Assembly: GCA_950097015.1 (NCBI GenBank)
Contig: CATNEN010000002.1
Location: 3,286,001-3,350,000 of the forward strand
Length of the DNA: 64,000 nucleotides
Origin: Macrostomum hystrix
Taxonomy: Eukaryota > Animalia > Platyhelminthes
Reading direction: 5' to 3'
Part shown: piece by piece, positions 3,746 to 31,331 of the stretch
How the letters are laid out: every line of letters starts with the position of its first letter
How positions within the stretch are numbered: position 1 is the first letter of the stretch
Made by a program: the position numbers and the translations under genes
The notes under the pieces: generated by a model
Told to the model about the DNA's origin: nothing
Seen by the model: the letters and a program-made list of their open reading frames with translations, nothing else
Databases searched by the model: none

Positions 3746-4287
3746 CTGGAGCTAAGGCATGCGCATCAGGAATATCTGGAGTCGAGTTCAACCCTCTTGT
3801 TGAGGGAGGCGCACTGGCCTGCGCCCGGTACAGTTTTAGTCCATTTGTAAAAGTGGATTCAAAACTAACCATCTGAAGTGTTTTGTAATGTCTGACCTAA
3901 TACAGCACTAAAACAAATTTATTACTGAATATACCAATATTGATAGGCTGCAGAGGGCTGAAACGAGGTAAAACGTTGAGGCGCGTACATATTGGTGTTG
4001 TAGTTAGACAACAGTAGCGGGCGGGCTGCCGTTAGTTTCAACCTCGTTTCAACACGCGTAGGCTAACTACAATGGTATTAATATATCAATATTGACAGGC
4101 TGCAGAGGGCTGAAACGAGGTAAAACATCGAGGCACGTAGCGCCGAGGCGTTTCACCTCGTTTGAGCCCGAGCAGCCTATCCATATTGGTGTTGTACGAG
4201 CGTAGTTAGCGGGCGTGAAACGCGTTTCACGGTCCGCTGAGACTTTCTATGGTAAAATCGCTCTGAGTTCTATGCCTTCAGTCGGTT

Positions 4288-8184: not shown

Positions 8185-11100
8185 TCAGAGTGGACTATTA
8201 AGAATAACTCCGAATGACGCTGTCTCTGCGTCCCAGGTTCTCTTAAATTCCGCCTTGCCGAGAGAGTTTTCAGCGGAGCACACGTAGGTGCCATACGCGT
8301 TGTCGCGGCCGATGTTCTCTGCAGTTGTGAAGGTGTCAAGCGATGAAAATTTGGGAGTCAAAATGCAGTGTGTCACTTCAGCCAATACCTTCTGACTAGT
8401 TTTCCTTAGAATATATTCTGGCTTAGACGGTTCTATTTCTTCGCGGAAATTCCATGGACTGCCCATACTATTTTTAGCACACGGGAAACCCACTTTAAGT
8501 GATGCTTTTCAACCAATGGGAAAACAGGAATCATTTTCTCTATTCCAATGTCCCTATTTGTTAATGCGCATCAGATCATTCGGTGGAAAATGGTAAAATT
8601 ATATTTTAGAAAAATATGATACACCTTTTTCTTTTGATAATTTCAACAGCCTCACAAGCTATATCTTGGCTTCCCTCCATAGGAAGCCAAAATCAATATT
8701 AATCCCTCCATATTGATAAATATTTTATTAAGGCTATTAAGGCCTTATCCTCTTAAGTCCATGGACTGAGGGGGACGCCACACCACCCTCAATTACCCCA
8801 CCTAATGCTGGTACAATTAAAACAAATGGATGAAGCGAAGCAATTTAAAGATAAGTGTATTGCTTATCTTTATAAATTGTTCTCTCTTTAGAGTCTCTAT
8901 CCCTGGACTCTGATTTTATCAGGTTCTAAACCGGACTCTCTCGCTGGGGTCAGGAATCGAACTTCCGACCTTTAAGTCGAGAGCTTCACGCTCTAATCAC
9001 AAGGCTTCAACCACACGCGCTGATTGGTTGAACCAATCAATCTAGATAAAACGAGTAACAAGTTCACAAACCTATCTACCAGCTATGTTACTTCCTTATC
9101 GCTCCTTTCCGATTGAGCAAGCAAGTTGATGTCCTTTCCTTACCTTTTGGTAGTCTGAAATGGAAGGGGTGTTAGAATAGCCTTTAGAATCTGTTTGTGT
9201 ACTTCAATTCATTAAACCACAATGCTTCTAAATCTAAACACTCACTTGTAAACTAGCTGCGACCCGTATCTGCCGGAGTCATTTTGGTCGAAAAAGGTCT
9301 TCTCATACTGCCTGATCCACCTTGGGGTCTCCAGTTGAACATTGTCCGCGTCGCGCTTGGTAATATCCAGATCCGGGTACGGGTAGCCGGTAAAGAGGCA
9401 TTCAAAATAAATGTCGCCTTCGTCCGTCTTCGTGATGTAAAAAAAGCCGTAAGTCCCTTGCCTCAACTCGCCTTCGCCAGGTCGGGCTAAGGGGTCGAGG
9501 TTTAAAGTACGTTAGCCCGACTAACGCACTTAGGGATGTCAACTTAAGACTCCAGAATGGAGACCTATGGTCAATAATCGAACCAAATCAACTGAAATCA
9601 GCAGCTGGTCGATCCAGTTGACCCAGAGTATCCCCAGGGTACCCTGAAATAAAGCGAACCCTAATACTGAGAACGAAACCCATTTCCCTGACTCCTGAGC
9701 ACACAGTACACAGATGATGTACACAGACCCTGATTTCAGGAAAAGTACTATCTTACTGCACCTTTAAGCTGGCCCTAAAGCGTGCCAATTGTACAGCAAG
9801 ACCCTTAAACCTTCTCGCTGCGGCTGCGCCCCAAGTTAGTGTGGGCATGCCGCGAGTTCGAGCAGGAATCTTGGTGCTCTGAGAAACTGAGACCGCTCTG
9901 CCACTCACCCCCTCCTAACAAACAATGTCCAAGCTACTCGGTTGGAAAATGTGACAGGAACGGAATCTTCGACAACGCCTTGAAAGCGTCTCTCATAATG
10001 CAATCTTGAAGCTTACTACGCTATAACTGAACCTAATCCGAATTAGCTTTCACAGCTTTCAGCAGAATCATGTTGCGCGAAAAGTTCTTACTTTGCATGA
10101 AAGCCTTGATGGGCACCGACTGAATATACAGATCTTTAACGCCCGATACGTTGATGAATGACCTGACGGCCACGCACATGAAAATGCCCGAATTGCTCAC
10201 GGAGCCAGTCTGCAGCGTCAGGGTCGCCTTGCCGCCCTCCAAACGCTTTTTCATGCCGGAAACCTCGGTGGCAGTGCCGGCTTCCCTCTCATCGTAGAGA
10301 CACTTGAAGTTCTTGCACTTTTGTGGGTGTGCGTGTGATAGGATGCTTGCAAAAATATTCCAAATAGAACGGCTATTTACAGGGCTCTCCAGTTTAACCT
10401 ACCTTGACCCAGTCCAGGTAGCGATATGCGTCTGAAATTATATCCACTTCTGCGTCGTAGTTCTGCAGAGTGCAAGTCAGCTCAATCGGTTGTCCATCGC
10501 GGCGCAAATCGACGATGTCCGGATTTCGAATGATCAACGAAGAGTTCACGGTGTCCTTCATTGTGACGACGATGTTGGGCCTCTCGGGAATCGCTAGAGA
10601 AAACGATGGTGTGAGAACATTATCTTAGTGGAAGGCTGGTGGGACTTCTTCTAAACCGGCCGATCTCTTTCTGTACGGACTCACAGACTGGTTCTCTGAC
10701 TCACTGCTTTGGTCTCTTCACTCACAAAGATTTAGTAGGCCTGTGCTTAGAGATTCAGGCACTAATCTGGGGGTCGGGAGTTTGCCAAACCTCAGCCAAG
10801 AAAAATTAATCTGTATTCCCGATTCGCAGCCAACGGAGAGACAATTCAGCACATTTCGCTGACTTCTGAACATGCACAGGTACATGGATACTGTATTCTG
10901 GCACAAACTCACAGGTGATCGTATCTGCCTTGAAGTTTCTTCAGGCAGTGTACACTCTCAATGTACCTTGGGGTTCGGCTCTCAAGGGCATAAATGGCAT
11001 GACAAGCCCCGAAGCCTCGGAATCGGGCTCAGGGACATTGGTGAAGGAATGAAACTAAAACAAGTGTCGCCAATGTGTATCTCTAATTCTTACTGAACAC

Positions 11101-14100
11101 AGTGATTTTAAAGTAGCGCTGCCCGATGCCCTGCGAAGGAATCTCGGAAGCATTCTGAGGCCGGACAAAGCAGACAATCTCCTTGTTGTTGAGCGTGTCG
11201 GGGATGTCGCTGATTGTCAGAGTGTTGCCCTCCTGCTTGGCGTAGTGAGGAAGTCCGCTCTGGCCGACTAGATAGAACTCGTACTGGTGCGGGAATGGGA
11301 TCTCAGAGACTCGACCGCCCCTTCAGAATGGAAAAAGCAGAACAGCTGATATTGTAGTTGTAGTGAGCAAACAAAAATTTCTTTCAGACGTTTGGGTTTA
11401 ATAAAAGAAATTCTATTTTCGATAAGAGACTTGTTTCTATGAGTTGATCGAATCTGCAGTGTTTGATGGATTCAAAAAACTATCCAGGCAATAAATGTTG
11501 CCTAGTCTCCACTAACCTCACTAACCTCAGTCTCTCAGTTTTTCTCCAAATCATGTCAAGACCACCACTACTCCGCTCCAATTGTTATACGAGTATATGC
11601 AAAATACGATACAACTTCATCCGCCGTTCAAAACGCATATTTAAAAGTTAATTCCAATTATGTTATAACAAAAATAGCTAAATAGTAAATGATGTTCTCC
11701 CAGCCACCCTAACTCCTCCTAGATCATCGTACAACCACGGGCCAATCAGAGCGCGGACTAGCTCTCTTGCTGTTCGGGCATTCTTACTCATTGTATTTAG
11801 CGTCGCATCGGATCAGCGCCACTCCACCGCGGGTCATGTAGAACTTGAGGTAGCGGTCATTGTAGCTGTACCACTTGTAATACTTCATGCGAATGCGGAT
11901 TTTCGACTGCACTTTCACAAAGTCGAGCTTTTTTGTGTAGGATGTCACGGCTTTGGTCTCAGGATTCTGTTGTTTAGCTCGGCACTGCCATTGGTAATCG
12001 GCGTACCTATCGTAGCTTGGCACCCGACAGTAGACAATGTTCGCCGCTACCTTCATATTGTCGCATTGCTTTATTACTAGAGGCACGTCCGACGATGTGT
12101 ATGGATCATAGTGCACCAGCTCCAGGTCCGTGCCGTACGGATTTCCAGTCATTTGGCAGTATATGGTCACATTCGGGTCATAGTAGCCGGCACCAGTCCA
12201 CCAGAACCAGTCCATCGGAGAGTAGACAGTGTCGGTCACCGCGAGGCTGTCGTTTTGCACTTTGTACATCATGCCGTAAGTGTCTTTCACGATGATCTTC
12301 AGCTGCAGTGGATCGTCTGAGGATCCGAATTTTTACAGAGACATTGTTATGAAGGGTTGAGGTAGACTATCAAAACTAAGTATTTTTTTTCAAATGTTAA
12401 AAGGCGGGTAAGAGAAAAAGTGACAAAAGTTATTATATAATATTATACACACTAAGTCAAAAAATCCGTAAATAAACTTACAGTCCATCGACTCGAAGCG
12501 CATGTTGATCGACCTGGTTTTGTGCGCAACGTCGTTTTTCGCATTGCAAGTGAAGGGCAGTTGATGTACATGCTTGTCCATAATAAAAGTAATGTTCGCG
12601 TAGCTTCGGTTTCCGATCTGACCCGCGTCAGCCAACTGTTAAAATAAATTCGGAATGTGTGAAGCTAGTCAAAAGGCTACATTGAATTTTGGGCTTTCGC
12701 AGTGCACCACTGCCTGACGGGGACAAATTTGGAACAGTAATACAACCTGGAAGGAGTTTGCCTGTGCAAGCATCCGTGTGTAATTTTACACAGTATATCT
12801 ACTACCCGTGAGGGGAGGAGTGGCAGAGCGGTCTATCGCATTTACCTCTAGCACCAAGGTCCCTGAGCTCGATTCCGTGGCGAGGCCACATTCATTTGGG
12901 GCGCAGCCACAGAGGATGCCCTTGAGGGCCAACCTCCGAGGCACAGTGAAAGTGTACACTGCCTGACGATGAGAAATTCAGGGCGATGTACACACCTGTG
13001 TGAGCATGTGTTTGCGTACAGTATCTGTGTACTTGTGTACTCAGGAGTCAGCGGAATGGGCAGAATTGCCTCCTTGCTTGCGCCAGGTATAGTGTCACCA
13101 AATTATGTGCCGTTGACTGCAGCCCTCGTGCAATTAATATATTATTACTATTGTTTATATAGTTGATATTTTATTTGAATTTTGGCTGTTCATCAAAACT
13201 AAAGGTAGGAACTAATTTTCGAAACTTGCGATTTTCTAAAATTAGATGTACATTTGGTCAGTGTCTCATTCAGTCTAGTTAGCGCGCTCATTGTACATTT
13301 GCTATGCAACTAGTGCAGTCTGACCATGAGCCATTCTCAATCCGACTCCTCCGTACCGAAGGAATCTCTAGCGCCAATCGCAGCACAGCATGAGCAGTCT
13401 CAGCGGAGCGGCAGCCTGTACAATCGCTCGTGTTGGAAGACAGGTGGTCCGTGCTAACTGTGTCAGAAGGAGATCAGCCACGACACTCAGATGTTCCATT
13501 CCTGTATTGCTACGACTACTTGGGACCTGAGCACAAAGTACTATTCGAAAAATTGCTACAGAGTACACCATGGGAAGCATGCAAATGTAAAATCAAAGGA
13601 ATGATATGCGACGAACCGCGGCGCACATTTGCATACGGAAAGCCGTACACTTACGCAGGAGTCGAATGGCCAGAGAACGAAAAGTGGCCTGAAGAGCTCC
13701 TAAAAATTCGGGACCAATTATCCTTAGAGACTGGAGTCGAATTTAACAGCGCTTTGCTCAACCTCTACCGAGATGGCAAAGATTCCATCGGATTCCACAA
13801 GGACGATGAAGATTGCCTTGGATGCTATCCAACAATCGCTAGCCTCCCGCTTGGCTCTGTAAGAACCTTGGTCATTCGAAATATCAAGGAATCGAGAGAC
13901 TACAGCCTCGTCATGAGTCCAGGAAGCTTACTGTTCATGCGTGGGCTCTCTCAGACTGACTTCCTACACTCTGTGCTGAAACAGCAGCATAGTGCACCGC
14001 GTATAAATGTCACTTTTCGCTGCGTTCAGAAGCGAAACTGCGGTTGACATCTCATTTCTAAGCCGACAAGCCAAACAATCAAAAACAAGGTGGCGCAAGA

Positions 14101-17100
14101 GACAATCAGTGACAGGCAGCAGCTCGGTGGCAGACTCAACATCTGCAGAGGAATCGAGCTTATGTGACGGACAGGCGACAGCTCAATTCAAAGTTCCGAA
14201 AAATAAGAAAGCAAAGAAAGGACAAGCGCTGGGAAAATCAAGTGATAGACCGGAAATGCGAACGTTAGCAGTGAAAGCGACCCAAATCGAAGTAGTGCTT
14301 GTCGACACTGCATGCAACACCGACTCCAGTCTACTGATGGACACGGACCTTAAACGGTTGAAAGCGGTTGAAGAAGGTGTCGCAGCGGTCCTGAGTGAGA
14401 TCAAGCAGCTAGCACACCGGCTTTCTATGGATGACTATATACGAGTACAAAAAAACCCGAAATACGCTCCAGTCGTTGATTTCTTCACTAAGTCACAATA
14501 CTGAGGCCCGGCTGCTGGCCAGCCAAGCAGAGATTCTTAAAACACTGAACACGAGTAAAGCAGAATCAACTAACCAAAGAAAGCAAATGATTGCTTCAAC
14601 CAAAGACTTACTCACTGCCGAAGAACGCGCAACAAGAGAGGATATTCACAAGAGTAAAGCAGCGATCAAGGAGTTCCATGATAAAATCACAGAGATGCAT
14701 AGCCAGCCAAAACAGGTGTCAAGCCCAAGCAGGACATATGCGGAAGCCCTAAAATCTCAAACAGCATCATCAGCACCATCGAGAAGCGAGCAGCCGACAA
14801 GACCTCCAGAAATCTCGTTTCTGGCAGCGCCAGCAGAACAAGCAGCTCGACACCCAAAAAGGTCAACGCAATCGCAACACGATGTAATCGTTCTGAGTAC
14901 CAAGCGAGGAAAAAAATGATCGACTACAGAAGGATTTTCCATAGCAACACATTGCGAGATGTGTACTACGAGTGGCAAAGTAAATTTATATAAATCCTAT
15001 GAGCACCGAACTTTGTCGCTCGCTTAGATATCGACTTAGATCCGGGTCTCTCAGTTGAGTCGACATACAAAGTAGTGTCAGCGATTGCAGAGGGATCGGC
15101 AAACCATCATGCGAGCTGTCAGCACCTTGTCATTCTTCCCGAAAAGAACACCACAGTCGCACAGATATTCGAAGGCGAACTGAAGGACTACAATGTAAAC
15201 CATCGCCTACTGGTTATCGATTTCGCCGATCACCACCATCAGTTAGATGGAGTACTGAGTGGAAGCGGAGTGCATCTTCATACAGCAACTGCAAGTTGTG
15301 TGAAAGACCTACAAATTAAAACAAGAAGCTATGTAAGCCATCCAGTGCAAAACAGAAGAATTCCAACTAATTCGAGAAGTAACGAAAGGCTGGATTACTT
15401 CCAAAGAAACACTCACGCTCAGTACCAGCCAGCTCGAAGTAAATATCACCAGAACTCCTTCGACAGAAGTCACAGAAATTTCACGTCTCAAACTTACGAG
15501 GAGAACTATCGTGCAGATATGGAGGACAGCCGCGGATGCCGCCACCGTCGCGGTTACAATCGCTATCCCAGATATGGTCTCTCTGGCCACAACAACGCAG
15601 CAAGCGCACAATATGAGACTGCTCCCTACTGGGAGAGGCACTCAAGAGGCACTCGAGACGATCGCGACTTCGGTGGTGCTGGTGGCTGGCAGCCGTCCGA
15701 TTGCCATACCACCCGCTACAACGGACGCTACGGTACCAGGCCTTGGTAGATCAACAAAGCGGCAACAAAAAGATTTGCGACAAAGGAGGAGCGGAGTCGA
15801 GAAGGCTCATGGTTAACGTTTATCGTAGAAACTTCTGAACTTCTTCTTGTTGCTTCGCTGTAGTCTTCTCTCACTGTTAACTTCTATCTATTCCTTTTTG
15901 TGATAACTTGTTATCTCATATTAAGCGAAACATGCTATCTCATTCAACCGCGAATTTTAAATTCCATATAACCCAGGCAGCTCAGGGCAGTCGCAATCAG
16001 TTCACTTCCAAGTATTACGATGAGGGTGTCTGGGAGGATATAAAAGGTCTCATTCAGACGTATTCCACAATAGGAATCGTTCTCACAATCGGTGATTTTA
16101 ATGCAAGGACGAGGTCAATGCAAGCAAATTGTGGTCCTCATTTCCAAAGAGTTAATCAGGACACGGGAAAAAACAAACATGGCCTCCAACTCTTAGAAGT
16201 GTGTTGTGAAACAAAATCAGCCATCCTCAATGGGCTACGAGCGTAAGTGGAGTAGCTGAAGGGGATATTTTGGGAACCTACACTTACAGCTGGGACGCAG
16301 CACTATTGTTTATGCCATTATTCCATAGATAGTCTTGACATGGTGGAAGATTTCTTCGTCCACCCTCAAAACTTCCTCTCAAAGCACTCTCTATTGGCAG
16401 TCAAAGTGCGCATACAAGACATGAACCCTCAGGAAGTCGTACGCGGGAGCAAGACCATAAACTATCCAAGGCCACCCACCTGGAATCCCGTTGCACAGCA
16501 GCACTTCATCGAAGCTCTAGAAAATCAACAGAGTCAACAGTCAACAGAGTCTGGACTTCATAAAGCAGATTGTTACACAGGAAGAAAAGGAGACCTCATC
16601 TATTGACGATCTCACATCTAAGTTAAACCGTCTGCTGGAGGAGTCCGTTCCCAAGAGCGGGGGTAAAAATATTATTCCCAACAAATTCTGGATAAACAGA
16701 GACGAAAATCTTTGGGATTTGGCTAAATCATTAAAGTACGTAGCAAGGAAAAAAGTCGAAAGCCAGCGGACAGATCACTAGTCACAGAATACGATGAGCT
16801 TGCAAAGAATTATAGGAACCATCTAAAATACTGAAAAAAGCTGACATAAATTATCTTATTTAGAAAATGGCATGCTCAAACACATCCAGGGGATTTTGGT
16901 CAGGTTTAAAAAGAGCCGAGGAATTGCTGTTTCAACAAGCGAGTTTCCAGGGCACAACCCCCAATAGCAGATATTCAGAAGCACCTTAGCAGCATTTTCA
17001 TCATGCAACCCTCAGTCAGATGCCTCCGAGGGCATCCTCCAAACCCAAAAATCTTTACAGACACAACAGTCGCACCCAGGAAATTGATAAGGCAGTGAAA

Positions 17101-20100
17101 AAAACTAAAGAAGAAAAAGGCAACAGGAGTTGACGGAATAACAAACGAGCACACGATAAATTAGAAACACATTTCAAAGACCTGAATTTACTATCAGCTA
17201 ATCAAATAGGAAACAGAAAAGATTGCCGGACTTCTGATAACATCGCAGCCCTATTGACATTAATTCATAAAAAGAAGAAAATGAAAAGACCTTTCCATTT
17301 AGTTTTCTTTGATTTAAAAGCGCCTTTGACCACCCAACCCTAGTCACGCGATTAAAGCAGTTGGGCGTGAACCCAGCAATAATAATTATCATTGAGAGTA
17401 TGTACTCAAGCGCGAAATTTCACCTCAAGGTGTCAGAAAGCACAGCTACTGAGACGTTTTAAATTACTAATGGCGTCAGGCAAGAATGACCCTATCTCCA
17501 CTGCTATTCTCCCTATACATCGACCCGCTAAGCAGAATTCTATCAAACTCATTTCAAAGCCATACCTCCATATTGAATGAAGAAGTAAACAACTTGCTTT
17601 ATTGTGACGATTTAGTCATTTTTGGTGTAGACCTGACAGAATTACAAAAAGGCCTCGACGAAGTAGCCGATTTTTGCAATACTCATAAATTAGAAATAAA
17701 CATTGAGAAGACAAAGCTTCTGAGCTTCAATCTCCAATCTCCATCTCAATCTCCATCTCAATCTCCATCTCAATCTCCATCTCAATCTCCATCTCAATCT
17801 CCATCTCAATCTCCATCTCAATCTCCATCTCAATCTCCATCTCAATCTCCATCTCAATCTCCATCTCAATCTCCATCTCAATCTCCATCTCAATCTCCAT
17901 CTCAATCTCCAACACAATCGAGCGTAGACAGTTTTTACATGGTCAACTGGTTGAACCCGTACAGCAGTGGTAATATCTTGGGTTTCACATGAACGTGAAG
18001 GAAATAATAGATGCTCATTCCATAGAACTAGGCAAAAAATGGATATCCAATAATGCTTATGAGAAAGTTAGCGGGATTTCAGAGAGTAAAACACAAACAG
18101 CTCATCTTGTTTAGCACAACTTGATTGAATGCATAGTTCTCTATGCATAAGAGGCCTGGGGAGCTTTTGTCTTCTGAAAACTGGGTACTTGGGATGGGAA
18201 CCTTAGAGAGAACTAATTTTAGAATCTGCAAGTCGATTCTGCAAGTTAGTCCAAACACTGACAGCAATGGTGCTCGGTCCGAATTAGGAAGACTACCACT
18301 GTTATATAGTATTCAAAAAAGAAGCCTTCAATACTGGTCCTCAGTTCGGAGCCGACCAGACTCCATCATCGCGAAATTGGAGGCAGATACAGAATACAGC
18401 GATGTTGGCATTGGGGAAAAATGAGTAGTGAAGTAATGCGGAATTGTCAACAGACTAGAAAAACAGTCCATCAAAACGCACAGGGAGAACTTGAGTCGGA
18501 GTTCCGAGGGCACTGGACTCAGAGGATGGGAAAAGCAGCCAAGCTCAGCCACTTCTTCTACACGTTTAAGAAAGATTTCTCTAGAGAAAAGTACCTAACA
18601 ATAATCTCTAACCCAGAACAAAAGCGCACAATGTCCCGATTTCGTCTAGGAAACCACAAACTGGCCTGTGAGATATTGCGCACTGTAAGACCGGAAATCG
18701 CCTATGAAAACAGAACATGTCCAAAATGTAGAGTCGAGGTAGAGAACGAAACTCATATTCTCTTTAGTCCGTTGGTCCATTGGTCGGCTTATGTTCCAAT
18801 TAGAAATAAAACACAATAGCTATTCTCCTTTCGGGAGCAAAGTGATTTCAGTCACAGTTTTAATTTTATCTTTAAATTTAAATATTTCATTTTTAATGCC
18901 TTTGTTTACAAATTAAAAATATTTATTCACCTAAAACTGATCTTATGCATGCTAGTGTTTTTCTATCGCCGTTTTTATCGAATCGTTCAGCCTTGTTACC
19001 AACATCAAATAAACAAAAAAATCAGCACCCAATCGGAGCGCGCGCTTCAATAATAATAATAATAATATATTGTCTTATAATATATTATTATTATTAACGT
19101 CGTCAATAACTGGCGGCGAATCGAACGTCGTCAATCTTGTACAAAATAATTTCAATACTTCAAGATCCAGAACACTTACAACCACGCCAGGAACGGTAGT
19201 AGCATTCTTCCCCCAAACATCCCACCAGATCTTGGCTGGCGGCACAGCGTTTTCATCGTAGCAATAGAACCACTGACGCCCGCCATTGATGAAAGTCCCC
19301 TCCGCCATGATGCATTTCGGTACGGGCGGCTTCTCTGAAGGTGGAAATTGAAACGAAGAGTGCCTAGAACAAAGACTACATGCAACTTGTTGGTGCAAAC
19401 TAGTCCAAAGGCTTGACCGTGACCTCATTAAGGCTTCAAAAATGCCTTGCCCAAGGCCACATATTGTTTTTCTTTCGGCTGAATTTCGAACTCCAAACCT
19501 CATAGTAAGAAGTTCGAAGCTCTAACCATTGAGCTAAAGCCACTAGCTCCAAAGTTACCCCTAGCTCCATCTCATAAGCTTTCTTTCCAATTCAGGCCTG
19601 GTACCTTCAACTGCAGTGATAAAGACGTTGTATTCCATGACCTTGGAGAACTGCGACTCGCGGCCAGGTTGAAAAAAGGTGTGGCAACGGCAATAGTACA
19701 TGCCAGAGCTGTCGTGCTTCGCGCCGGTGATGTTCAAAGTCGGCTGAGTCTCCGAGTACAATGGGATCATCTTGGGCCGAGTGCGTCCGAGCAACTGCCG
19801 GGCACTTTTCAGCGGCGTGTACACCCAGGAATAGCGATGACATGGCAGCCCGTCGTCATCCAGATTGTTGCTGCTAGGCAAGCATGATAAGTTGACGCCT
19901 GCACCCTCTTTTAGATAGATGTTTCTGGTGCCTGCGAGTTTTGGCAAGACTTCAATGTCCGCTTTCTTCGAGTCAAAATTAGACACCGCTATTGTTGACT
20001 CTGGCTGACGCTGGCAGCTGAATGTGCCCCAGTGCTCCACGCCCAGCGGGTTCAGTACAAGATCGTCGCCATCGCGAGACACTCCAGGCGGTAGCAAGTC

Positions 20101-23100
20101 TGCCTCAGTCTCGTCCATCGAGCTGTAGCGCTGCTTGTTCTGCGCGCCCAGAGGATTCCCCAGCGATACCGCTGAGTTTGCGTTGGCCGGCGTGAACTTC
20201 CAGTGGATGGGAATGCTGACCTCGTTTGGACTGCGGACGATCTTATTGCACTTGAGGCGCATCGCACTGCCCACAGGCTGCTCCACCTTGCTGGTTGGTG
20301 ACGTCAGTTCCCAGTTGAAGGGCTGCCCTGTGTGTGGGAGACAACAGAAATACTAAATCCAATGAAAGCAGGTCTATTGGCGATATAATCAAGACATGTG
20401 AAGTGGGTGCTCAGATTTGAAATGGTGGAGTACGACGACATAATCGCCAAAGAATCATAGCCAGGAGGGTCAGGTTTAGGAGAGGAACAGGGTGCCTTAT
20501 GCATTCAACCTTTTTTAGTTAAAAAGACCTCCGGGTACTGAAGTATTTCAAATACAGAATAATATTTTTTCTGCATCTCTAAAGATATGAACAACCAATT
20601 ACAATGAAAACACAGAACGCTAAAATTTTCTGTTCATTCCAATAAACAACTTGAAAAATAAAAAATCATCGGCATCAGCGAGATATTCAACGATTCTCGT
20701 CGGGGTGTATGCTGGCAAAAACCACCAACACCTGTAAAATTTTTCTGCAAAGAAAATTTCACCATATGCCATGCATTCATGCATTCAAATTAAACTGTCT
20801 AATTAGCACACTTACGTGGCTTAAGAATGATCGGCATTCTTCGACTAACAGTGACATTGTTGACCATGTCGCTGACGTGGCATGTCCAATAGCCGGTGTC
20901 ATTGTCATTATTCATGTCGTGGACGACTGTGTCCGTAAAATTGGCGCCGTTGGCCTGCTGCTTGATGGCTTCGAAGCGCTCCGAAAGACGCCCAGTAGGG
21001 AACGGGAGCCGTGTCAAAGTGGCCCTGAACTGGGCCGGTCGCGACGGCTGCATTGTGGAGTGGACGGTTGTGGATTATTGTTAAGTTTCTTAAGTTTTAA
21101 TGTCATTTAGAGAAGAGCGACGAACCTCCTTGGCCACAACTGAGCACTTTAGAGTGGTGGTGTCGGGGTCCTTGGGATCGCTTCGCAGCACCACCCTCTT
21201 CACCGAGCTGCTTTGCACCGTCAGGTTTGAAAATGCCACTGCGGACCCGGATCGTCTGTTGAAGCCTTCGCATCTGTACCGACCACTGTCTGACGGGCTG
21301 GCGTCCTTGATCACAAGGCGGGTCGACTTCTCATCGCGCACCTGGTAGATTCGGGACGTATCTGCCAAACGACGTCCATCAGAGTCCTGCCACTCCAGCA
21401 GCCAGGCGGTGCCGTTGTAGCCGGGTTTTTGTCGCCTGACCAGGCAAGTCAGCACCACTGTACGACCGGACGGCACATTCAGGGTCTCTGGCTCCACGGT
21501 TGGAACCACGTCTGTGAATGCATCGGCCACGGAGTTGACAGTTATGGTACACAATATGCTGATCCCGGGATATTACACACAGTATAAGATCCTTAGATAT
21601 GAACTGCTTTGAATCTGGTTCACTTTATTCAGCTTTTAAAACTTTGGATTTACACTGAACTAGTTGATTTTGTGAACCACTTATATTTTTCTTGTCTGAG
21701 AAGTAGCGTAGTCATGCAGAGAAAAATTTTGCAACAAAAATTGACAACTGTTTTTCTGCTATCAGTTTCTAGATCCAGACTAGCTAGATAAAACCTGCAT
21801 GTGATGCTGCAAATTCCCATCATAGCATGGTCTAGCCTTAGTCAGCAGTGGCTCTTATTTGACCAATTTTAATATGAGCCGATCAGCTCGGCTATAAACA
21901 GCACCCATATAGGCAAAACCAGTGCACTTGATATCGCTATTATATACTTAGCACATTGAACTCGGCCATTCGATTTGAATGGAAATAGTTAGGTTAAATG
22001 TAAATGGAATGGAAACAAAGCTATTCGTTAGCTTACACTCTTCACAATCGGGTCGCTGTCCTCTTGGTCGGCCCACAATCTTGTCTGCATAGCCTTCCTC
22101 GCAGCTGAAATCGTTGAACAAGGAGAGCAAGCAGTACATGTACCATGCATGAATGAATGCTTGTTTCCTATGTAGAACTTTCGCTTTTCGAATGTGAAAT
22201 CTTATCTAACCACGACTCGGCAAGCGACTATTAGACTCTGCTGAGGTACTGAGTTTTTTACCTGATTTTCCTCCTAGACTCTTAAAAATAACGAACCATG
22301 TAATTTTATTGCTATTTTATCTTCTGTCTGAATTGAACTGGAATTTGGTCTTACGTGTCACAACCCGGAGAGTTCCTGTAGCCTTCTAGGCAGGGAACAC
22401 ACTTCCACCTGTTCACAGTTGAGTTGTAGTCCACAATCTTGTGGAAATCTCCGGTTGTCTTGCAGTCCTGACGATGAAATTGTTAAGTCTTGATGTAAAA
22501 CATTTTTGAATTACGGTTTGCTGCCAAACCATTTGGTGATATCAGCTTTAATTTGAGTTTATCTTATTCCACTGTTTAGTTACATCGGTCTTGCTTGCAA
22601 TCAACATGGACTTCGCTTGTGACTACTTGATGCTAAAACAAATTCATGGTACTTCACAATTTCAGATGCGGAGATAAAAATTGTGTCGCAGGTTCACATG
22701 TCTTATTGAATGCTAAACAATATCTAGTTGCTATCGAGGATCCGACGAAGATGTTTGGGTTAAATCTGTTTGCGCAGAAAATCTATTTGCGCAATATTTC
22801 AGGGGCCAGCTTGCTGCCCGGGCCACCGCCTGCCGCAAGCAGCTGCTTTTAAAACCTGAAAATGCGCCCAGCATCTAACATCTAACGCTCTTCTACAGAT
22901 CCTACGAAGATGTTTAGGTTAATTTTGTTTGCGCAGAAAATCTATTTGCGCAATATTTCAGGGGCAAGGTTGCTGCTCGGGCCACCGCCTGCCGCCAGAT
23001 CCTACGAAGATGTTTAGGTTAATTTTGTTTGCGCAGAAAATCTATTTGCGCAATATTTCAGGGGCCAGGTTGCTGCTCGGGCCACCGCCTGCCGCCAGAT

Positions 23101-26100
23101 CCTACGAAGATGTTTAGGTTAATTTTGTTTGCGCAGAAAATCTATTTGCGCAATATTTCAGGGGCCAGGTTGCTGCTCGGGCCACCGCCTGCCGCCAGAT
23201 CCTACGAAGATGTTTCGGTTAATTTTGTTTGCGCAGAAAATCTATTTGCGCAATATTTCAGGGGCCAGGTTGCTGCCTGGGCCACCGCCTGCCGCCAGCA
23301 GCGCCCAGCATCTTAGGAGGCCCTGGGAAGGCGGCGGCATTGCTACAAGCGCTGGTAGTGATGCAGCAGCCCACGATCTCCATGAATGGAGTGGATGAAG
23401 GCAATGATGCCGACTTGCAAAGATGCAGAAATGCAAACGTGACCCCTGGTACGGGTTTAGTCTTTGTTATAAAAACATGGAAAAACTGCTTTGACCCTAG
23501 ATTTGCTTGCTGAACCCTTCCGCCGAAATTCTGGTTTCTCTTGTCCCTTGACCCGTCCTATGCGAATCATTTGCTAAACCAGCTTTATCAGTTGTAAAAC
23601 TGCTCCAAAGTGATCCAGGTGCTGGACCCAAGCCTTGCATTTTCCGAGGTTCAATTGCAAATAGCTGCTTCTCTGACAAAATTTGTGAATTTCCCCTGTC
23701 CCTCGGCTCAGAACCTTCGTGCAAAAATTGCGCTAACGTCAACTGTGACCTTAAAAGGGCACCCGTCTGCTGGTTTTTGGCCTTACCTCACAGAAAGCGC
23801 CCTGGTAGGGATCGGGGCAAACAGTGCAGCGCTCTACGGGAGCTGGTTCAGCACCCGAGCTGGTGTTGGTACTTGACTGGTACGTGATGTCCAGAATGCG
23901 CACGTTCATCTGGCCCTGGAATTGGTAGATCCGGAAGAAAATTCCACGCAGATCAGCGAGGGCGGTCATCACGTCCATTCTAGTGACGGCCGAACCGTCG
24001 ATGGCACGCAGGTTCTGCTCGTCGAGTGTCACGGAGAAGCGAGTCTCTGGGGCGCGGTTGGTGGTTCGGTCCCAATGCACCAAGGTCTGGCCTCTCCAGC
24101 CCTGATATTTGGATGAATAATAATGCATTTGAATGTAAATAACAGATGCCATTGTAGAGCAAAGCACTCTAATTTTCGACATTTGCTAAATATGAATGTC
24201 ATTCTTCATCTCAAGCACGCTCGCTGTTACGATCGTCTTCCATTCTGCTCAGCAGTTTTTTCACTTTTCACAACGGCCCCTGTCAATTTTAGCATAGACG
24301 CTGTCGCCGTACCTTGATGCCGAAGATTGGGAACGCCGTATCGGCCATCAGCGCTGTGTCCATGCGCACGTTGACTCGCACGGTGAAGCTCAATTTGCCG
24401 CCGTAGGCTGCCAGCTGAAAATGAAAGTTCACACGATTTCTTTTATTTTACATCACGAACTTGGATTCAGAGTGTCCCAGACTGTTGTCTAGCCGTACCC
24501 GCTTGCCAGACAAGCTCGTCAAGAACACGTAGGACTCGTCATCGTCTCGCAAAGCTGACGAGTCGTCTCCAGTTGGGGCCACGGCTATCTCCGCTCCGGA
24601 CTGTACTGTGAGCTTGGCGCGTGAAGTAGCGTCCTCGTACACTCCGTACAGGCCCCAGCCCATCAAACGCACCGCGGATGCTTCCACTGGTACTCGCTTC
24701 TGCAGTCGTTTGTCAAATGAAACCATGTACAGTTGATAAGCATGTCGAGACAAATTTATTAACCTATTCTAAACTGATGAGAGACTTTTCTGTACCTCTT
24801 CGAAGTAAAGGCCGGCATTTTCGCAAGCATTCGATCGGTCGGAGCAGAAGCAGGGCACGCATCCATCCGGGTGGTCCCGCCTGAGACTGTGGAAGCCCGG
24901 CTTGCACTTGTCACAGTTTTCACCTTCCACGTTCGCCTGAATTCGAAAGATGAAACAATTTCCAATTAGCTTTTTTCGTTGCACTTTATGCTCATGTGGC
25001 TTTGTACTTTTAATTTTTTCTTAAGGATGAAACAAAATCTGCGGTCAGCTGCTCACCTTGCAATTGCAGACGTTGTTCTGGCAAATGCCACCGATGTTGC
25101 AGGTCTTGTTGCAGTCGATGCCAGTGGCGACTAAATTCAGTTATCAAATTGTTGCTCAAACTTTTCTCATTGCTTTCTATCTGGCTGCGAAGAGCCAGCT
25201 AGTCTTTAATAATTATACAAAAAATCAAATGCCTGCTTGCTTGCTGCAATCGAGTAACTCCGGAAGGGCTTTACCGACTTTTATAACTCCTTGACTAAAA
25301 TATGGCCTTTCGCTTATATAAAAAGTTGATTCTCTGATGCTGGGGCACATTGGTTCTCTGCTGCTGGGGTACATTGGTTCTCTGATGCTGGGGCACATTG
25401 GTTCTCTGCTGCTGGGGCACATTGGTTCTCTGATGCTGGGGCACGTTGGTTCTCTGATGCTGGGGCACATTGGTTCTCTGATGCTGGGGCACATTGGTTC
25501 TCTGCTGCTGGGGCACATTGGTTCCCTGATGCTGGGGGACATTGGTTCTCTGATGCTGGGGGAGAGTAGGGTTTTTCTGCTCAGGTTGCCAGCCATTAGG
25601 TGATTATGTTTGGGGCCAACAGGTGGGGGCGTATCAGCTTTTTGAGAGGACAAGTGCGATTTGCATTAGAGAATAGTATAAATCCTGAAATCCTGAAGTT
25701 ACCTATTGCTAGTAAAAATGATAATATATATGTTATTCATTTAAATTTATGAAACGTGCTACTGCATTAAAGGTCATTAAATACATAATGCCGAAGGTTT
25801 GAACTGGTCCATTGATAATAGCACCAATGAACTCGGAATTCGTAATTTTGTCAGGGCTTCAAAGCTAGTTCTCCTTTACTCCGTCACTCCCTCAAAGGGG
25901 GAATCTATTTGCGCGTTACTTGCGCGTTACTTGTACAAGCCCTTGTGTGCAGTGCATTAGATTAACAACTATTATCGTTTCTAGTGTATTTTCTATCGAA
26001 ACGTACTAAAACTAATGCGTTGCTTATACTTGCAACTGACTCACACATTGGTTTTTTGTCTTTCCACATTCATAATTTCGTGTCTACCTACTTCCTTTTA

Positions 26101-28453
26101 AATGACTAGCCGCTTATTTACCATTAGCTTGCAGTCATTATTTAAACACTTGAAGGTTAGATTAGGTTAGATTAGGTTAGGTTTGCTTAGGTTAGATTTT
26201 ATCAGATTATAAAATAATGATTAAACGCTTTATAGTTATAGCTCGTAGACAGCACATCTGAGATTTGTCATTGGATTCAAAAAGTATGCACAAGAAATCC
26301 CATATAACTTGTGAAAAAAGCTCACGTGGGTCCTTAACAAGCGGTACAGGATCCGAGTATCTCCTTGTGCCAGACGGATCCACACCGGAACACCTGTACC
26401 ATTGATTCCCCCTACTTGGTCTGCGATAGTTGGAGCTCAGGGTAGAGGAAAAAGTTTTGTGCGTATTCTCCGGCGGCCCGATGGGATCATTGCGCTCATT
26501 GTTAAAGTGAAACTTGATGTCTCGGAGGCGCTTATCATGAGTGCAGTTCACAAATTTGAACCCGGGGAACGGTGACGGTCCGACTGTCACGGCTGAAAAT
26601 TCAAGACAGAAAAAGCTTGCCAGTAAAGTATTTGGAATCTACTGTGAATAACAACAGAACGTACTAATCTGAATTGGCTGCTCAAATTGCAGCGTCACAT
26701 AGTCAAACTTATCGCCCAGACGGCACTCCAGTCGGTAGTTGTGAAAGCGTGGATTGGCGCGAAATTTAATGGTGACCAGCTGGCTGGAGACGGAGTCCTT
26801 GATAGACGTCTCGAAGCCGCCGGTGTTTCGATTCACTGGAATGTCGAAAGATGGGCTGCCATCCGAAGGCTGAATGCGCCAAACAACGTCGTTGAGCTCG
26901 CCTCCGATGGGAATTTCGCATTCCAGTTCGTTTTCGGCCCCGGGGTACGTCGACAGGTCGTAGGTCGACTTGCCGTAATCGTGAATCGTAGGAACTAAAA
27001 TTTTGTTAATAAATCTTGCGTTTTTATGCCTTGCACACGAAAGTATTACGTTTTATGGACTCTGGAGAATTAGGCTCGCACACTTACCAATGACCCGAAT
27101 ATACAGAAAGGCATACTTCACTATGCCTCCGACATTGCAACGATAGTAGCCCTTTTTCCTTACATCGCAGTTCTTAACCGAGAGCACTGACGAGCTCGGG
27201 CTTTCTTGAATCTCAACGTTGTCCAGTGTACTGATATTGCGGTACGAACCAGCGGAAGCGGTGTCATCACGGAATGACCATCTGGTACTGTCAGACGGGT
27301 CCACCTTGTGGCACTCGAAAGCAACCTTGCTCTTCGGTGTGACGAAAATCGGGACGCTGGCAACATCCACCGGCACGGGCCGCATTCCGTCTGAAAAGTT
27401 GTAACCGTGCATGAAACTGTAGTCAGTACTATGTATGCATGAAACTGTAGTCAGTACTATGTAGGCATGAAACTGTAGTCAGTACTATGTATGCATGAAA
27501 CTGTAGTCAGTACTATGTATGTGAAACTGTAGTCAGTACTATGTATGCATGAAACTGTAGTCAGTACTATGTATGCATGAAACTGTAGTCAGTACTATGT
27601 ATGCATGAAACTGTAGTCAGTACTATGTATGCATGAAACTGTAGTCAGTACTATGTATGCATGAAGGCATCGAATAAAAATTCAGAGTTAGAAACTATAA
27701 GTACATACGCTCGTAGACATTGGTCATTCGGCCGTCAATGACTCGCTGAACGGAATCTTTCACAACTTTGAAAAATATGGCGGTATTCGATGGACTGGCT
27801 GTATCGGCGCACTTGTAGTACGTAAATCCAATGCCGTACTCTCTGCTCAGCTCTGAGTAGGGTAGCAACAGCTGCGGGCCCATCTGCCCGCTGATCTCGT
27901 CGAAACTAAGCGTCACATCGTTGTACTTGTACCACCTGTATGACCCACCGCTGCTCAGCGCGATCGTGCAGGTCAGAGAGGCGTCTCTATTCACCGAGAC
28001 CGATGTCTCGATAATGTTACTCGTCGGTGGCACTTGAAATAGAAAGATTGCGGTTGAAAATGAGTATTGAATGGGTTAGCAGAATTAATAAAAATTAGCT
28101 GACTCACAGTCGGTGATGACGAACAATGAAGCCCTGTACAAATTCGGAGACACGGGCGGGTCGGTCATGCAGTAGTAGGAGCCGAACCTGCTCTTGTCGT
28201 TCTGGCTTACAATCAGCAGCGGCGTCACGCTGACAACAAGGCCGTCCTTCACCCAGGCCTTGAAGCGTCCCGGGGACGACACCGTGCAGTTAATATGGAT
28301 CGGGAGCTCCTGAGCCTGGTAACGGTAGATATTCTGCACCTGGAACTCGAAAAACATTGGTTGGTTGACGGCCAGGCCCTGGGCGTTGGCACTCATTGGC
28401 GACAACAGAAGGCCAAGGAATAGGCAGGCCAGGACAACTGCTGGCTGGCCCAT
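8185..28453 (-). CDS. Ig/laminin multidomain secreted protein, paralog B (perlecan-like architecture, 24 exons, about 1930 aa)
   Basis: Exons 28108-28453, 27709-28032, 27088-27390, 26665-26994, 26326-26592, 25057-25130, 24796-24936, 24499-24699, 24313-24414, 23787-24101, 22355-22467, 22037-22104, 21126-21511, 20816-21047, 19605-20327, 19180-19334, 12482-12635, 11788-12316, 11094-11320, 10403-10593, 10092-10317, 9246-9486, 9144-9154, 8185-8318. All are GT-AG and phase-consistent, total 5793 nt. Signal peptide, Ig C..W..D-x-G-x-Y-x-C motifs (e.g. DSGRYRC), laminin EGF and IV modules, and a stop with no hydrophobic TM segment. Confidence 0.85.
8740..9015 (-). mobile_element. tRNA-derived SINE in last intron of B
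   Basis: Minus strand has an A-box-like tgattagagcg and B-box agttcgattcc; the body resembles the SINE at 40882. Left boundary approximate. Confidence 0.65.
9144..9154 (-). CDS. 11-nt micro-exon of paralog B
   Basis: tttcag|ACTACCAAAAG|gtaagg; bridges a phase-2 donor (9246) to a phase-1 acceptor (8318); identical in C. Confidence 0.75.
12812..13150 (+). mobile_element. tRNA-derived SINE
   Basis: A box tggcagagcgg, degenerate B box gagctcgattcc, unique body and AT-rich tail. Confidence 0.65.
13430..14047 (+). CDS. AlkB-family 2OG-Fe(II) dioxygenase domain (ALKBH2/3-like) at the start of LINE ORF1
   Basis: PRRTFAYG.PYTYAG, FNSALLNLYRDGKDSIGFHKDDE (HxD), LHSV (distal His), RINVTFR (RxxxxxR). 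Intronless; frameshifted relative to the ATG at 13326 and to downstream ORF1 pieces. Confidence 0.9.
   Translation: MLEDRWSVLTVSEGDQPRHSDVPFLYCYDYLGPEHKVLFEKLLQSTPWEACKCKIKGMICDEPRRTFAYGKPYTYAGVEWPENEKWPEELLKIRDQLSLETGVEFNSALLNLYRDGKDSIGFHKDDEDCLGCYPTIASLPLGSVRTLVIRNIKESRDYSLVMSPGSLLFMRGLSQTDFLHSVLKQQHSAPRINVTFRCVQKRNCG
14007..15749 (+). pseudogene. Remainder of LINE ORF1 (coiled-coil, possible SGNH-esterase-like region, RG-rich tail), frameshifted
   Basis: Overlapping ORFs 14007-14504, 14431-14919 and 15075-15749; TYAEAL motif and helical heptad-like stretch. The esterase call rests on weak motifs (VILPEK, GVHL). Confidence 0.55.
15908..18819 (+). pseudogene. LINE ORF2 (APE endonuclease, reverse transcriptase, C-terminal zinc motif), multiply disrupted
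   Basis: IGDFNART, NKHGLQLLEVC, SKHSLL (APE); LSPLLFSLYI, LLYCDDLV, INIEKTK (RT); CPKCRVEVENETH. Confidence 0.9.
17729..17910. repeat. 12-bp microsatellite (ctccatctcaat)n, about 15 units
   Basis: Perfect tandem units inside the RT region, reading as (SPSQ)n. Confidence 0.95.
19477..19541 (-). pseudogene. Degenerate tRNA-like sequence (tRNA pseudogene or SINE head)
   Basis: ggctttagctcaatggttagagc...gagttcgaaattcagcc: A and B boxes are present but the stems are imperfect. Confidence 0.5.
22739..23298. repeat. 100-bp intronic tandem repeat, copy B (about 5 units)
   Basis: 100-nt period is visible in the ORF track starts 22929/23029/23129/23229; one interruption near 22850-22900. Confidence 0.9.
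25332..25560. repeat. 24-bp minisatellite, copy B (about 9-10 units)
   Basis: ctctgatgctggggcacattggtt units. Confidence 0.92.
27409..27665. repeat. 28-bp intronic satellite, copy B (about 9 units)
   Basis: catgaaactgtagtcagtactatgtatg units. Confidence 0.95.
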
Positions 28454-31319: not shown

Positions 31320-31331
31320 TTTGCAGTCCAC

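What the first reader, a model, noticed from the sequence alone, without database searches (positions are those of the whole stretch)
9246..9486. Two hypervariable patches in a C-terminal Ig exon (B versus C at 45420-45657)
B reads ELRQGTYGFFYITKTDEGDIYFECLF-TGYPYPDLDIT..RWIRQ-YEKTFFDQNDSGR-YGSQLVY. C reads DDSGMNGRMFISKTGTGDLELKCIV-TGYPYPDLDIT..RWIRQ-FEEAYYSNSSSNT-YGSQLVY. Two blocks are almost wholly replaced around a nearly invariant core and a conserved Cys, while the adjacent introns and most other exons are nearly identical. Exon divergence exceeding intron divergence points to diversifying selection or segmental gene conversion on a binding surface, in the manner of CDR loops.
Basis: partly seen in the sequence, partly recalled or inferred. 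Interest (0 to 1): 0.8.

Follow-up and report, generated by a model that had tools for sequence, protein, structure and literature searches.

The report
Hypervariable patches in flatworm Ig paralogs
In the flatworm Macrostomum hystrix, tandem copies of a secreted multi-Ig gene are almost identical except for two short stretches of the last Ig domain that have changed about as fast as immune or mate-recognition surfaces do, which marks an undescribed candidate recognition family.

Summary
B (9246-9486) and C (45420-45657) differ at about 40% of bases in two patches. The core between them, the introns and about 14 kb of the rest of the gene are 96-99% identical.

Three corrections:
- The exon is not the last one. 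RNA contigs and a Macrostomum lignano protein show it splices to an 11-nt micro-exon and then a terminal exon that completes the domain.
- The domain is a divergent I-set-like Ig fold. The patches fall on strands A/A'-B and D plus the D-E turn, not on CDR-type loops. Strands C, C', E, F and G do not vary.
- Ten copies lie on one contig, in four patch types plus a chimera.

Patch dN/dS is 1.9-2.9, significant under one codon-frequency model only. Patch nonsynonymous divergence is 4-6 times that of the linked intron (p about 1e-10 to 1e-13). Intron and exon trees conflict, so copies exchange sequence.

Best reading: gene conversion and crossing-over homogenise the genes, while diversifying selection keeps and widens two surface segments. 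No free-standing donor cassettes exist. The ligand and the role are unknown.

This is a new member of a known kind, of moderate interest. Earlier notes of this scan report similar local hypervariability in other Ig families of this genome, on other DNA.

The parts
9246..9486 (-). Antepenultimate exon of gene copy B (241 nt; entered in phase 1, left in phase 2). It encodes strands A to E of the last Ig domain.
   Evidence: RNA-contig joints 10092|9486 and 9246|8320; acceptor ttag|CC and donor AA|GTGAGT read; translation.
9398..9474 (-). Hypervariable patch 1 (codons 5-31 of the exon): the unmodelled A region, strand A', the A'-B turn and strand B, including the first Cys.
   Evidence: 59-77% identity between patch types against 94-98% in the introns; strand assignment from the model of the M. 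lignano homologue.
9306..9397 (-). Near-invariant core (TGYPYPDLDITKRDADNVQLETPRWIRQ): B-C loop, strands C and C', and the loop before D.
   Evidence: 95-100% identical in all nine copies, with no synonymous change.
9262..9305 (-). Hypervariable patch 2 (codons 59-72): strand D, the D-E turn and the start of E. Every type has an N-x-S motif here.
   Evidence: 61% identity between type I and all other types; alignment; model.
9144..9154 (-). 11-nt micro-exon (cag|ACTACCAAAAG|gtaagg), which restores phase 1.
   Evidence: Nine extra letters between the two sides of the joint in contigs of X3 and X4 (table 5c). The site is identical in all nine copies. The resulting KLPKENIG matches KLPTENIG in P0001.
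8185..8318 (-). Terminal exon: strands F and G with the second Cys (GTYVCSAENSLGK), a variable tail and the stop codon.
   Evidence: Sequence; translation; RNA contigs run through it into the 3' UTR; intact in L001-L007, with tails that differ.
10092..10317 (-). Preceding exon, the second half of the penultimate Ig domain.
   Evidence: Joints 10403|10317 and 10092|9486; omega about 1 among copies.
10403..10593 (-). First half of the penultimate Ig domain, separated from the next exon by an 85-nt intron.
   Evidence: joints; translations.
45420..45657 (-). The same exon in copy C (type IV patches; one codon shorter).
   Evidence: It is identical to the next tandem copy, L008.
42661..42797 (-). 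Terminal exon of copy C. The F and G strands are as in B; the tail differs.
8188..28453 (-). Gene copy B as a whole: an apparent signal-peptide exon (by eye), Ig exons, laminin-EGF and Laminin B exons, more Ig exons, and a LINE in one intron.
   Evidence: ORFs; Pfam Ig_3, I-set, EGF_laminin and Laminin_B. Exons at 11784-12635 are matched by P0001.

Best explanation
The window comes from Macrostomum hystrix. It holds tandem copies of a secreted, perlecan-like multi-Ig gene: an apparent signal peptide, Ig domains, and laminin-EGF and Laminin B domains. Copies of the family exchange sequence often, by gene conversion or unequal crossing-over. This keeps introns and most exons 95-99% alike and shuffles the 5' and 3' halves of genes. 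Two segments of the last Ig domain escape this homogenisation and have built up many amino-acid changes: strands A/A'-B, and strand D with the D-E turn. Diversity between copies is favoured there by selection. These segments lie on the A-B-E-D side of the sandwich, and the other elements do not vary. The family therefore most likely presents one constant face and one diversified recognition face. Shown here: the pattern, the splicing, the Ig fold, the excess of nonsynonymous change and the conflicting trees. Inferred: that the patches form a binding surface, and what they bind.
For: Identity of the genome: total length 220,453,370 bp in 42 contigs matches Table 1 of PMC10468722 exactly.
Pattern.
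Selection:
- Nei-Gojobori, B versus C patches: dN 0.67, dS 0.26. Outside the patches: dN 0.012, dS 0.
- Codon model: patch omega 2.85 (LRT p = 0.004, F1X4). Tree length is 2.3 per codon, against 0.13 for the rest of the exon and 0.48 for the penultimate Ig exons, where omega is about 1.
- Patch pN 0.34-0.38 against 0.083-0.090 in the downstream intron, which has the same tree as the exon (Fisher p = 1e-10 to 1e-13).
Exchange between copies:
- The upstream intron groups L006 with L002-4 and L001 with the rest. It rejects the exon's clades (AU p = 0.03 and 0.026), and the exon rejects the intron's clade (p = 1e-26).
- Positions 9261-8953 carry no difference fixed between types (0 of 91 next to the exon), while the intron further on is 9-10% diverged.
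- B and C are only 82-90% alike downstream of 8949. The patch dS of 0.26 is close to that older divergence.
Fold: the model has eight strands, and Foldseek matches I-set domains such as NEGR1, titin/obscurin and TrkB d5.
Integrity: all nine copies keep the exon, the micro-exon and, where seen, the terminal exon open.
Transcription: spliced contigs carry type I exons, and other contigs carry the core with other patch types.
Against: - With F3X4 codon frequencies omega is 1.94 and is not significantly above 1 (p = 0.085). The sample is only 41 codons in 7 distinct sequences.
- Comparing patches with introns assumes a shared history, and gene conversion breaks that assumption.
- The core's lack of synonymous change is not in itself significant (about 1.3 changes expected), so homogenisation of the core is not proven.
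- The structural model is of moderate quality (pLDDT 67.6). It is of the M. lignano homologue, and no coordinates were available, so exposure was judged only from strand alternation.
- There are no population data, no second species and no functional data.
Confidence: 0.6

Rival explanations
1. The family expanded recently and underwent a burst of positive selection, with no role for homogenisation. On this view all copies are young (about 3-5% neutral divergence), and the patches gained 30-45 amino-acid substitutions since then purely by adaptive point mutation.
For: Introns are uniformly 94-98% identical among all copies. Pure synonymous differences in the patches are few, and patch dS does not differ significantly from the linked intron for type I versus types II and III. 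The boundaries coincide with structural elements.
Against: Trees of intron and exon conflict, so the copies do not share a single history. B and C are 10-18% diverged just downstream of 8949 but 1-3% upstream. Many codons differ at two or three positions, and there are graded intermediate types, which points to long accumulation.
Confidence: 0.15
2. One recombination event accounts for B versus C, and selection need not be invoked. B is a chimera with a C-like 5' part and a type I 3' part. The two 'patches' appear only because the core between them is conserved in every lineage, and the patch types are old, weakly constrained variants (omega about 1).
For: Informative sites switch between 9503 and 9472: upstream, B sides with L005-L009; from the exon downstream it sides with L002-L004. 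Under F3X4, omega is not significantly above 1. The neighbouring Ig domain has omega about 1.
Against: Patches evolve about five times faster per codon than the neighbouring exons whose omega is about 1, and 4-6 times faster than the linked intron that shares their tree. Relaxed constraint cannot exceed the neutral rate. Positions expected to be buried change conservatively (I/L, F/L/V) while positions expected to be exposed change radically (Y/E, E/K, F/R).
Confidence: 0.15
3. The patches are mutationally targeted: a local hypermutation or templated-replacement mechanism acts on these two segments, in the germ line or the soma.
For: Synonymous changes also seem enriched in patch 1. By eye in the alignment there are about five on the tree, against none in 28 synonymous sites outside the patches.
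Against: No donor cassettes exist outside the ten gene copies. The RNA contig of X3 matches the genomic B exon with no mismatch, so there is no sign of somatic change. Nonsynonymous changes still outnumber synonymous ones.
Confidence: 0.04
4. The copies are an assembly artefact, that is, uncollapsed haplotypes or mis-joins.
For: The assembly paper reports some residual duplication.
Against: Ten copies sit at distinct places on one contig with different flanks, insertions and deletions. The line sequenced was strongly inbred. More than one patch type appears in RNA contigs.
Confidence: 0.02

Closest known systems
MHC class I/II genes: a divergent peptide-binding region with homogenised introns (own knowledge of the literature)
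   Same: Short coding segments are far more divergent than the adjacent introns. dN exceeds dS in those segments. Recombination or gene conversion erases divergence elsewhere.
   Different: Here the contrast is between tandem paralogues in one inbred genome, not between alleles. The fold is an Ig domain, the variable elements are beta strands of one sheet, and trans-species persistence is untested.
Hydractinia Alr1/Alr2 and the Alr family of unusual IgSF genes (PMC9546547 and PMC8282982; only the abstracts listed were read)
   Same: An invertebrate cluster of divergent IgSF genes in which specificity evolves by point mutation in an Ig-like domain.
   Different: Alr proteins are transmembrane, and it is the membrane-distal N-terminal domain that varies between alleles. 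Here the protein appears secreted, the variable domain is the last one, laminin-type domains are present, and the animal is solitary. No sequence relationship was found.
Arthropod Dscam1 variable half-Ig exons (own knowledge)
   Same: A separate exon encodes the N-terminal part of an Ig domain and carries the variable strands on the A-B-E-D side, while the rest of the domain is constant.
   Different: Dscam diversity comes from mutually exclusive splicing of exon arrays inside one gene. Here each gene copy has a single such exon, so diversity comes from paralogues.
Perlecan (HSPG2) domains III-IV
   Same: Laminin-EGF and Laminin B modules combined with a run of Ig domains in a protein with an apparent signal peptide.
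   Different: Perlecan is usually a single, very long, conserved gene. This is a short, tandemly repeated, fast-evolving family that has only one clear relative among 1.84 billion representative proteins.
KIR, Ly49 and other tandem immune-receptor families shaped by gene conversion and positive selection (own knowledge; titles)
   Same: Tandem arrays, domain shuffling by unequal crossing-over, and positive selection at ligand-contact residues.
   Different: No signalling tail or membrane anchor was seen here, and the ligand is unknown.

Membership tests
Immunoglobulin superfamily, I-set-like domain | Two-sheet beta sandwich of seven to nine strands | tested here: met
   The AlphaFold2 model of P0001:472-592 has eight strands (pLDDT 67.6, pTM 0.64). 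Foldseek matches I-set domains (NEGR1, titin M10/obscurin, TrkB d5) at E of 3e-4 or higher, probability 1.0, TM 0.45-0.55.
Immunoglobulin superfamily, I-set-like domain | Cys in strand B paired with Cys in strand F, inside a Y-x-C motif | tested here: met
   Cys29 of the exon (FECLF) is invariant in all copies. GTYVCSAEN in the terminal exon is invariant in L001-L007 and in C.
Immunoglobulin superfamily, I-set-like domain | Score above the Pfam gathering threshold | tested here: inconclusive
   The exon alone gives no hit. For whole P0001, I-set scores 25.8 bits (cut-off 23.7) and Ig_3 scores 27 bits (cut-off 30). The isolated domain scores 18 and 15 bits.
Immunoglobulin superfamily, I-set-like domain | Conserved Trp in strand C | tested here: not met
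   Strand C of the model reads DLEIIRY, or DLDITKR in M. hystrix, with no Trp. The only Trp (RWIRQ) precedes strand D. This marks a divergent member, not a different fold.
Antibody/TCR-type hypervariable (CDR) loops | Variability concentrated in the B-C, C'-C'' and F-G loops at one tip of the domain | tested here: not met
   The B-C loop (GYPYP), strands C and C', and strands F and G are invariant. Variability lies in A/A', B, D and the D-E turn.
Dscam-type alternative exon arrays | Several mutually exclusive copies of the exon within one gene | tested here: not met
   There is one copy per gene. DNA and protein searches of the whole genome find ten places, each in its own gene copy.
Gene families under diversifying selection with concerted evolution (MHC-like pattern) | dN greater than dS in the variable segments | tested here: inconclusive
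   Omega is 2.6 by Nei-Gojobori for B versus C. By codon model it is 2.85 (p = 0.004, F1X4) but 1.94 (p = 0.085, F3X4).
Gene families under diversifying selection with concerted evolution (MHC-like pattern) | Variable segments more divergent than linked non-coding DNA | tested here: met
   Patch pN 0.34-0.38 against intron p 0.083-0.090, Fisher p = 1e-10 to 1e-13. For B versus C the contrast is about 40% against 1-3%.
Gene families under diversifying selection with concerted evolution (MHC-like pattern) | Evidence of exchange between copies (discordant genealogies) | tested here: met
   AU tests; mosaic site patterns.
Gene families under diversifying selection with concerted evolution (MHC-like pattern) | Variant lineages older than the species (trans-species persistence) | not testable with these tools
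   Only one homologue from another species is available (P0001). It is about equally distant from all types, at 58-62%.
Perlecan-like extracellular matrix proteins | Laminin B and laminin-EGF modules combined with Ig repeats | tested here: met
   Pfam Laminin_B 36.7 bits, EGF_laminin 25.2 bits, I-set 34.9 bits and Ig_3 37.7 bits on separate exons.
Perlecan-like extracellular matrix proteins | SEA, LDL-receptor class A and C-terminal laminin-G modules; a single conserved orthologue | not tested
No such Pfam hit appeared on the exons scanned. The family is tandemly repeated.

The most novel reading that the evidence does not exclude
The genes form a flatworm-specific family of soluble recognition proteins, for immunity or for mating and self-recognition. 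The A-B-E-D face of the last Ig domain would set specificity. The family would work together with the Mab21/cGAS-like genes interleaved in the array. Supporting hints: an M. lignano protein model and one M. hystrix copy (L010) join the Ig gene's 3' end to a Mab21-like C-terminal region.
Probability: 0.15. Interest if true: 0.75.

Novelty: new member of a known kind. Interest (0 to 1): 0.45.

Why it matters
Flatworms have no described diversified recognition receptors of the Ig type. This family is transcribed, tandemly repeated and confined, as far as the databases show, to Macrostomum. It shows the mark of recognition molecules elsewhere: a constant scaffold with a small, fast-changing surface, maintained against ongoing homogenisation. 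It gives a concrete and small target (about 40 codons) for binding and knock-down experiments in a genus that already has transgenic and RNAi tools. It is also a clean case for studying how selection resists gene conversion over tracts of less than 100 bp.

Tried and rejected
- The repeat finder on the whole window was swamped by a 33-nt tandem repeat, so I used a BLAST self-comparison instead.
- Pfam on the exon alone gave nothing.
- The word-index protein search with P0001:470-600 found only the query itself. The family is too rare in the databases for a deep alignment, so the structure model rests on ten rows.
- Sequencing-run search: no run is on record as RNA. Four runs of contigs were laid. 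Two of them behave as transcriptomes, with GT-AG joints. Contigs can be chimeric between paralogues: the X3 contig has B's exon but an L002-4-like exon two steps upstream. Expression therefore cannot be assigned to single copies.
- Searches for patch-only donor cassettes found none.
- The first paper search and the Macrostomum Ig and selection search found no description of this family. The sponge aggregation-factor paper is unrelated.
Exons were used one by one by reference, and the complete domain was studied through the stored M. lignano protein P0001.
Full report
**What is at the coordinates**

The finding lies on the minus strand. The window is G000:C2:3286001-3350000 of a genome of 220,453,370 bases in 42 contigs. 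These two figures are exactly those given for the Macrostomum hystrix assembly in Table 1 of PMC10468722. The only clear database relative is a Macrostomum lignano protein. I therefore take the organism to be the free-living flatworm M. hystrix, sequenced from an inbred line.

**Check of the observation**

- A BLAST self-comparison shows that the window holds tandem copies of a long multi-exon gene.
- Copy B runs from about 28453 down to 8188. An 8.3-kb stretch (11037-19366) is absent from copy C. Copy C runs from beyond 64000 down to about 42661.
- In the B-versus-C alignment, mismatches per 50 nt are 0-5 everywhere except 9250-9300 (16) and 9400-9500 (31).
- Patch 1 (9398-9474) is 62% identical and patch 2 (9262-9305) is 61%. 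The core between them is 96% and the upstream intron 97%.
- Over the remaining 12 kb of the gene there are 0-4 substitutions per 100 nt and no second island of this kind.
- Changed codons: 29 of 41 inside the patches and 1 of 38 outside (p = 5.6e-11).

**Gene structure: the exon is not the last one**

- Contigs of two public runs (X3 and X4, one study) behave as transcripts. They skip 10318-10402 and 9487-10091 with CT..AC ends, which is GT..AG on the minus strand.
- The same contigs join 9246 to about 8320 with nine extra letters in between.
- Those letters lie at 9146-9154. With the GT-AG rule the piece is an 11-nt micro-exon, 9144-9154: cag|ACTACCAAAAG|gtaagg. The terminal exon then starts at 8318.
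- The exon is entered in phase 1 and left in phase 2 at AA|GTGAGT.
- The reading across the junctions...QLVY-KLPKE-NIGRDNAYGTYVCSAENSLGK..., is matched by ...QLVYKLPTENIGPDKAKGTYVCTAENSLGK... in P0001.
- The micro-exon and its splice sites are identical in all nine full copies. The terminal exon is open in L001-L007 and in C.

**Is it an Ig domain, and where are the patches?**

- The exon alone hits no Pfam family. The complete domain in P0001 gives weak Ig_3 and I-set matches.
- I aligned P0001:472-592 with the separate exon translations (A3) and folded it. The result has pLDDT 67.6, pTM 0.64 and eight strands.
- Foldseek places it among I-set domains: NEGR1, titin M10/obscurin, TrkB d5 and nectin-like proteins. 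Probability is 1.0 and TM 0.45-0.55.
- Both canonical cysteines are present and invariant. The strand-C tryptophan is missing. It is a divergent Ig domain.
- Patch 1 maps to the poorly modelled A region, strand A', the A'-B turn and strand B.
- Patch 2 maps to strand D, the D-E turn and the first residues of E.
- The B-C loop (GYPYP), strands C and C', most of E (YGSQLVY), F and G do not vary between copies.
- The variable elements are therefore three of the strands on the A-B-E-D side, not the CDR-type loops.
- Within the strands, positions expected to point inward change conservatively (I/L, F/L/V, F/I/M). Positions expected to point outward change radically (Y/E, E/K, F/R, Y/S). This fits a folded domain with a diversified surface, but it is inferred from strand alternation alone, because no coordinates were available.

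**The family**

- DNA and protein searches of the whole genome find ten places, all on contig C2 between 2.46 and 3.62 Mb.
- Nine are full copies, in four patch types: type I (L001 = B, L002, L003, L004), type II (L005), type III (L006, L007) and type IV (L008, L009 = C).
- The tenth (L010) is a chimera.
- Types are interspersed along the chromosome.
- Among all nine, the upstream 1.5 kb is uniformly 94-98% identical and the core 95-100%. The patches are 59-77% identical between types.
- Patch-only searches find no copies outside these genes, so there is no bank of donor cassettes.

**Selection**

- Nei-Gojobori estimates for B versus C give dN 0.67 and dS 0.26 in the patches (omega 2.6). Outside the patches they give dN 0.012 and dS 0. 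Other type pairs give omega 1.6-4.5.
- A Goldman-Yang model on the 41 patch codons of seven distinct sequences gives omega 2.85 with F1X4 frequencies (LRT against omega = 1, p = 0.004). With F3X4 it gives 1.94 (p = 0.085). The classical test is therefore suggestive, not decisive.
- Tree length is 2.3 substitutions per codon in the patches. It is 0.13 in the rest of the exon and 0.48 in the two exons of the penultimate Ig domain, whose omega is about 1.
- The downstream intron has the same tree as the exon for L001-L007, so it serves as a linked yardstick. It differs by 8.3-9.0% between type I and L005 or L006. Nonsynonymous sites of the patches differ by 34-38% (Fisher p = 1e-10 to 1e-13).
- Relaxed constraint cannot push a coding segment several-fold above the neutral rate. 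That requires positive selection, greater age or local hypermutation.

**Exchange between copies**

- The upstream-intron tree puts L006 with L002-L004, and L001 with L005, L007, L008 and L009.
- The exon and the downstream region put L001 with L002-L004, and L006 with L005 and L007.
- The intron data reject the clades (L001-L004) and (L006, L007) at AU p = 0.03 and 0.026. The exon data reject (L006, L002-L004) at p = 1e-26.
- Site patterns switch between 9503 and 9472, at the 5' edge of the exon. B is thus a mosaic, with a 5' part close to C and D and a 3' part of type I.
- From 9261 to 8953 no difference is fixed between types (0 of 91 next to the exon). Further down the intron the types are 9-10% apart.
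- B and C are only 82-90% alike beyond 8949.
- The region around the exon therefore looks homogenised across all types, with the two patches as the only surviving divergence. The patch dS (0.26, on about five events) is of the order of the divergence in the 3' flank that has not been homogenised.

**Most likely mechanism**

Old paralogue lineages are kept alike by frequent gene conversion and unequal crossing-over. Selection for difference between copies preserves two surface segments of the last Ig domain and keeps adding change to them. I put this at about 0.6.

The rivals, with their evidence, are in the Rival explanations section:
- a recent burst without homogenisation (0.15);
- a single recombination with old, unconstrained patches (0.15);
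- targeted mutation (0.04);
- assembly artefact (0.02).

**What the protein is**

- Separate exons of copy B carry Ig_3 and I-set, laminin-EGF and Laminin B matches. There is also an N-terminal exon that looks by eye like a signal peptide (MGQPAVVLACLFLGLLLSPMSANA).
- The terminal exon ends without a hydrophobic anchor.
- The design recalls perlecan domains III-IV, but the family is short, tandemly repeated and fast-evolving.
- A profile search of 1.84 billion representative proteins finds one true relative. That is P0001 from M. lignano, at E = 1.7e-26. The other three hits are generic Ig-repeat matches.
- Ligand, tissue and role are unknown. Immunity or reproduction are guesses.

**Comparison and novelty**

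- The pattern works like MHC peptide-binding exons with homogenised introns, and like KIR-type tandem families.
- The placement of variability in a separate exon for the N-terminal strands of an Ig domain recalls Dscam. There is, however, no alternative-exon array, and the patches are not CDR loops.
- It is a new member of a known kind of system, in a phylum where none has been described.
- Earlier notes of this scan report locally hypervariable heads in near-identical copies of other Ig families of this genome, on other DNA. I did not test those.

Noticed in passing
L010:1400-1800 (G000:C2:~2504918-2505138, minus strand): A tenth copy is a chimera. The exon runs normally through patch 1 and the core up to NVQLET, then continues in frame into ...AEGIDFDAWLSELQNDPDLEELLTLAHYSDQR. 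That sequence is a C-terminal segment of the Mab21-like ORF that neighbours the Ig genes (compare window 31335-34877). The M. lignano protein P0001 likewise continues from the Ig gene's last exon into a Mab21-like C-terminal region.
   Followed up: partly
window 31335-34877 (-): A 1181-aa ORF between Ig gene copies has a Mab-21_C match (25.6 bits, cut-off 24.1). Its C-terminal half consists of about 55 tandem 11-residue repeats (SSVNHPSKLRA), encoded by a 33-nt DNA repeat at about 31300-33100.
   Followed up: partly
window 11037-19366 versus 47206-47213: Copy C lacks 8.3 kb that is present in B. The stretch holds a LINE-like element (about 13300-18800) and also three coding exons of B (about 19200-19350, 12390-12635 and 11784-12290, all matched by P0001). 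C therefore encodes a protein about 300 residues shorter, or is defective.
   Followed up: partly
window 10403-10593 and 10092-10317 (-): The penultimate Ig domain also has small indel-variable spots between copies (MKDTVNSSL / MNDSSL / MKDIADSSL; EVDIISDAYRY / EMDINLEPNRYSDVYRY). Its overall omega is about 1.
   Followed up: partly
window 8188-8250 (-) and 42664-42730 (-): The tail after strand G differs strongly between copies (KRTWDAETASFGVILNSPL, TSTWNAERARLSALRLKSRL, and a truncated ...ERASF in L005 and L007). This is a third variable segment.
   Followed up: partly
window 9155-9245: The 91-nt intron between the exon and the micro-exon has 0-1 differences among all types, although the intron further downstream is 9-10% diverged. 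The cause may be constraint on micro-exon splicing or a conversion tract.
   Followed up: partly
window 55449-57002: A 28-nt tandem repeat array lies inside a 4.7-kb insertion in an intron of copy C, relative to B at about 27500. There are also 100-nt direct repeats at 22896-23298 and 50864-51266.
   Followed up: no
window 276-3929: A third, partial gene copy (A) matches the 5' part of B and C at 96-98%. No copy of the hypervariable exon was found in the genome where A's 3' end would lie.
   Followed up: no
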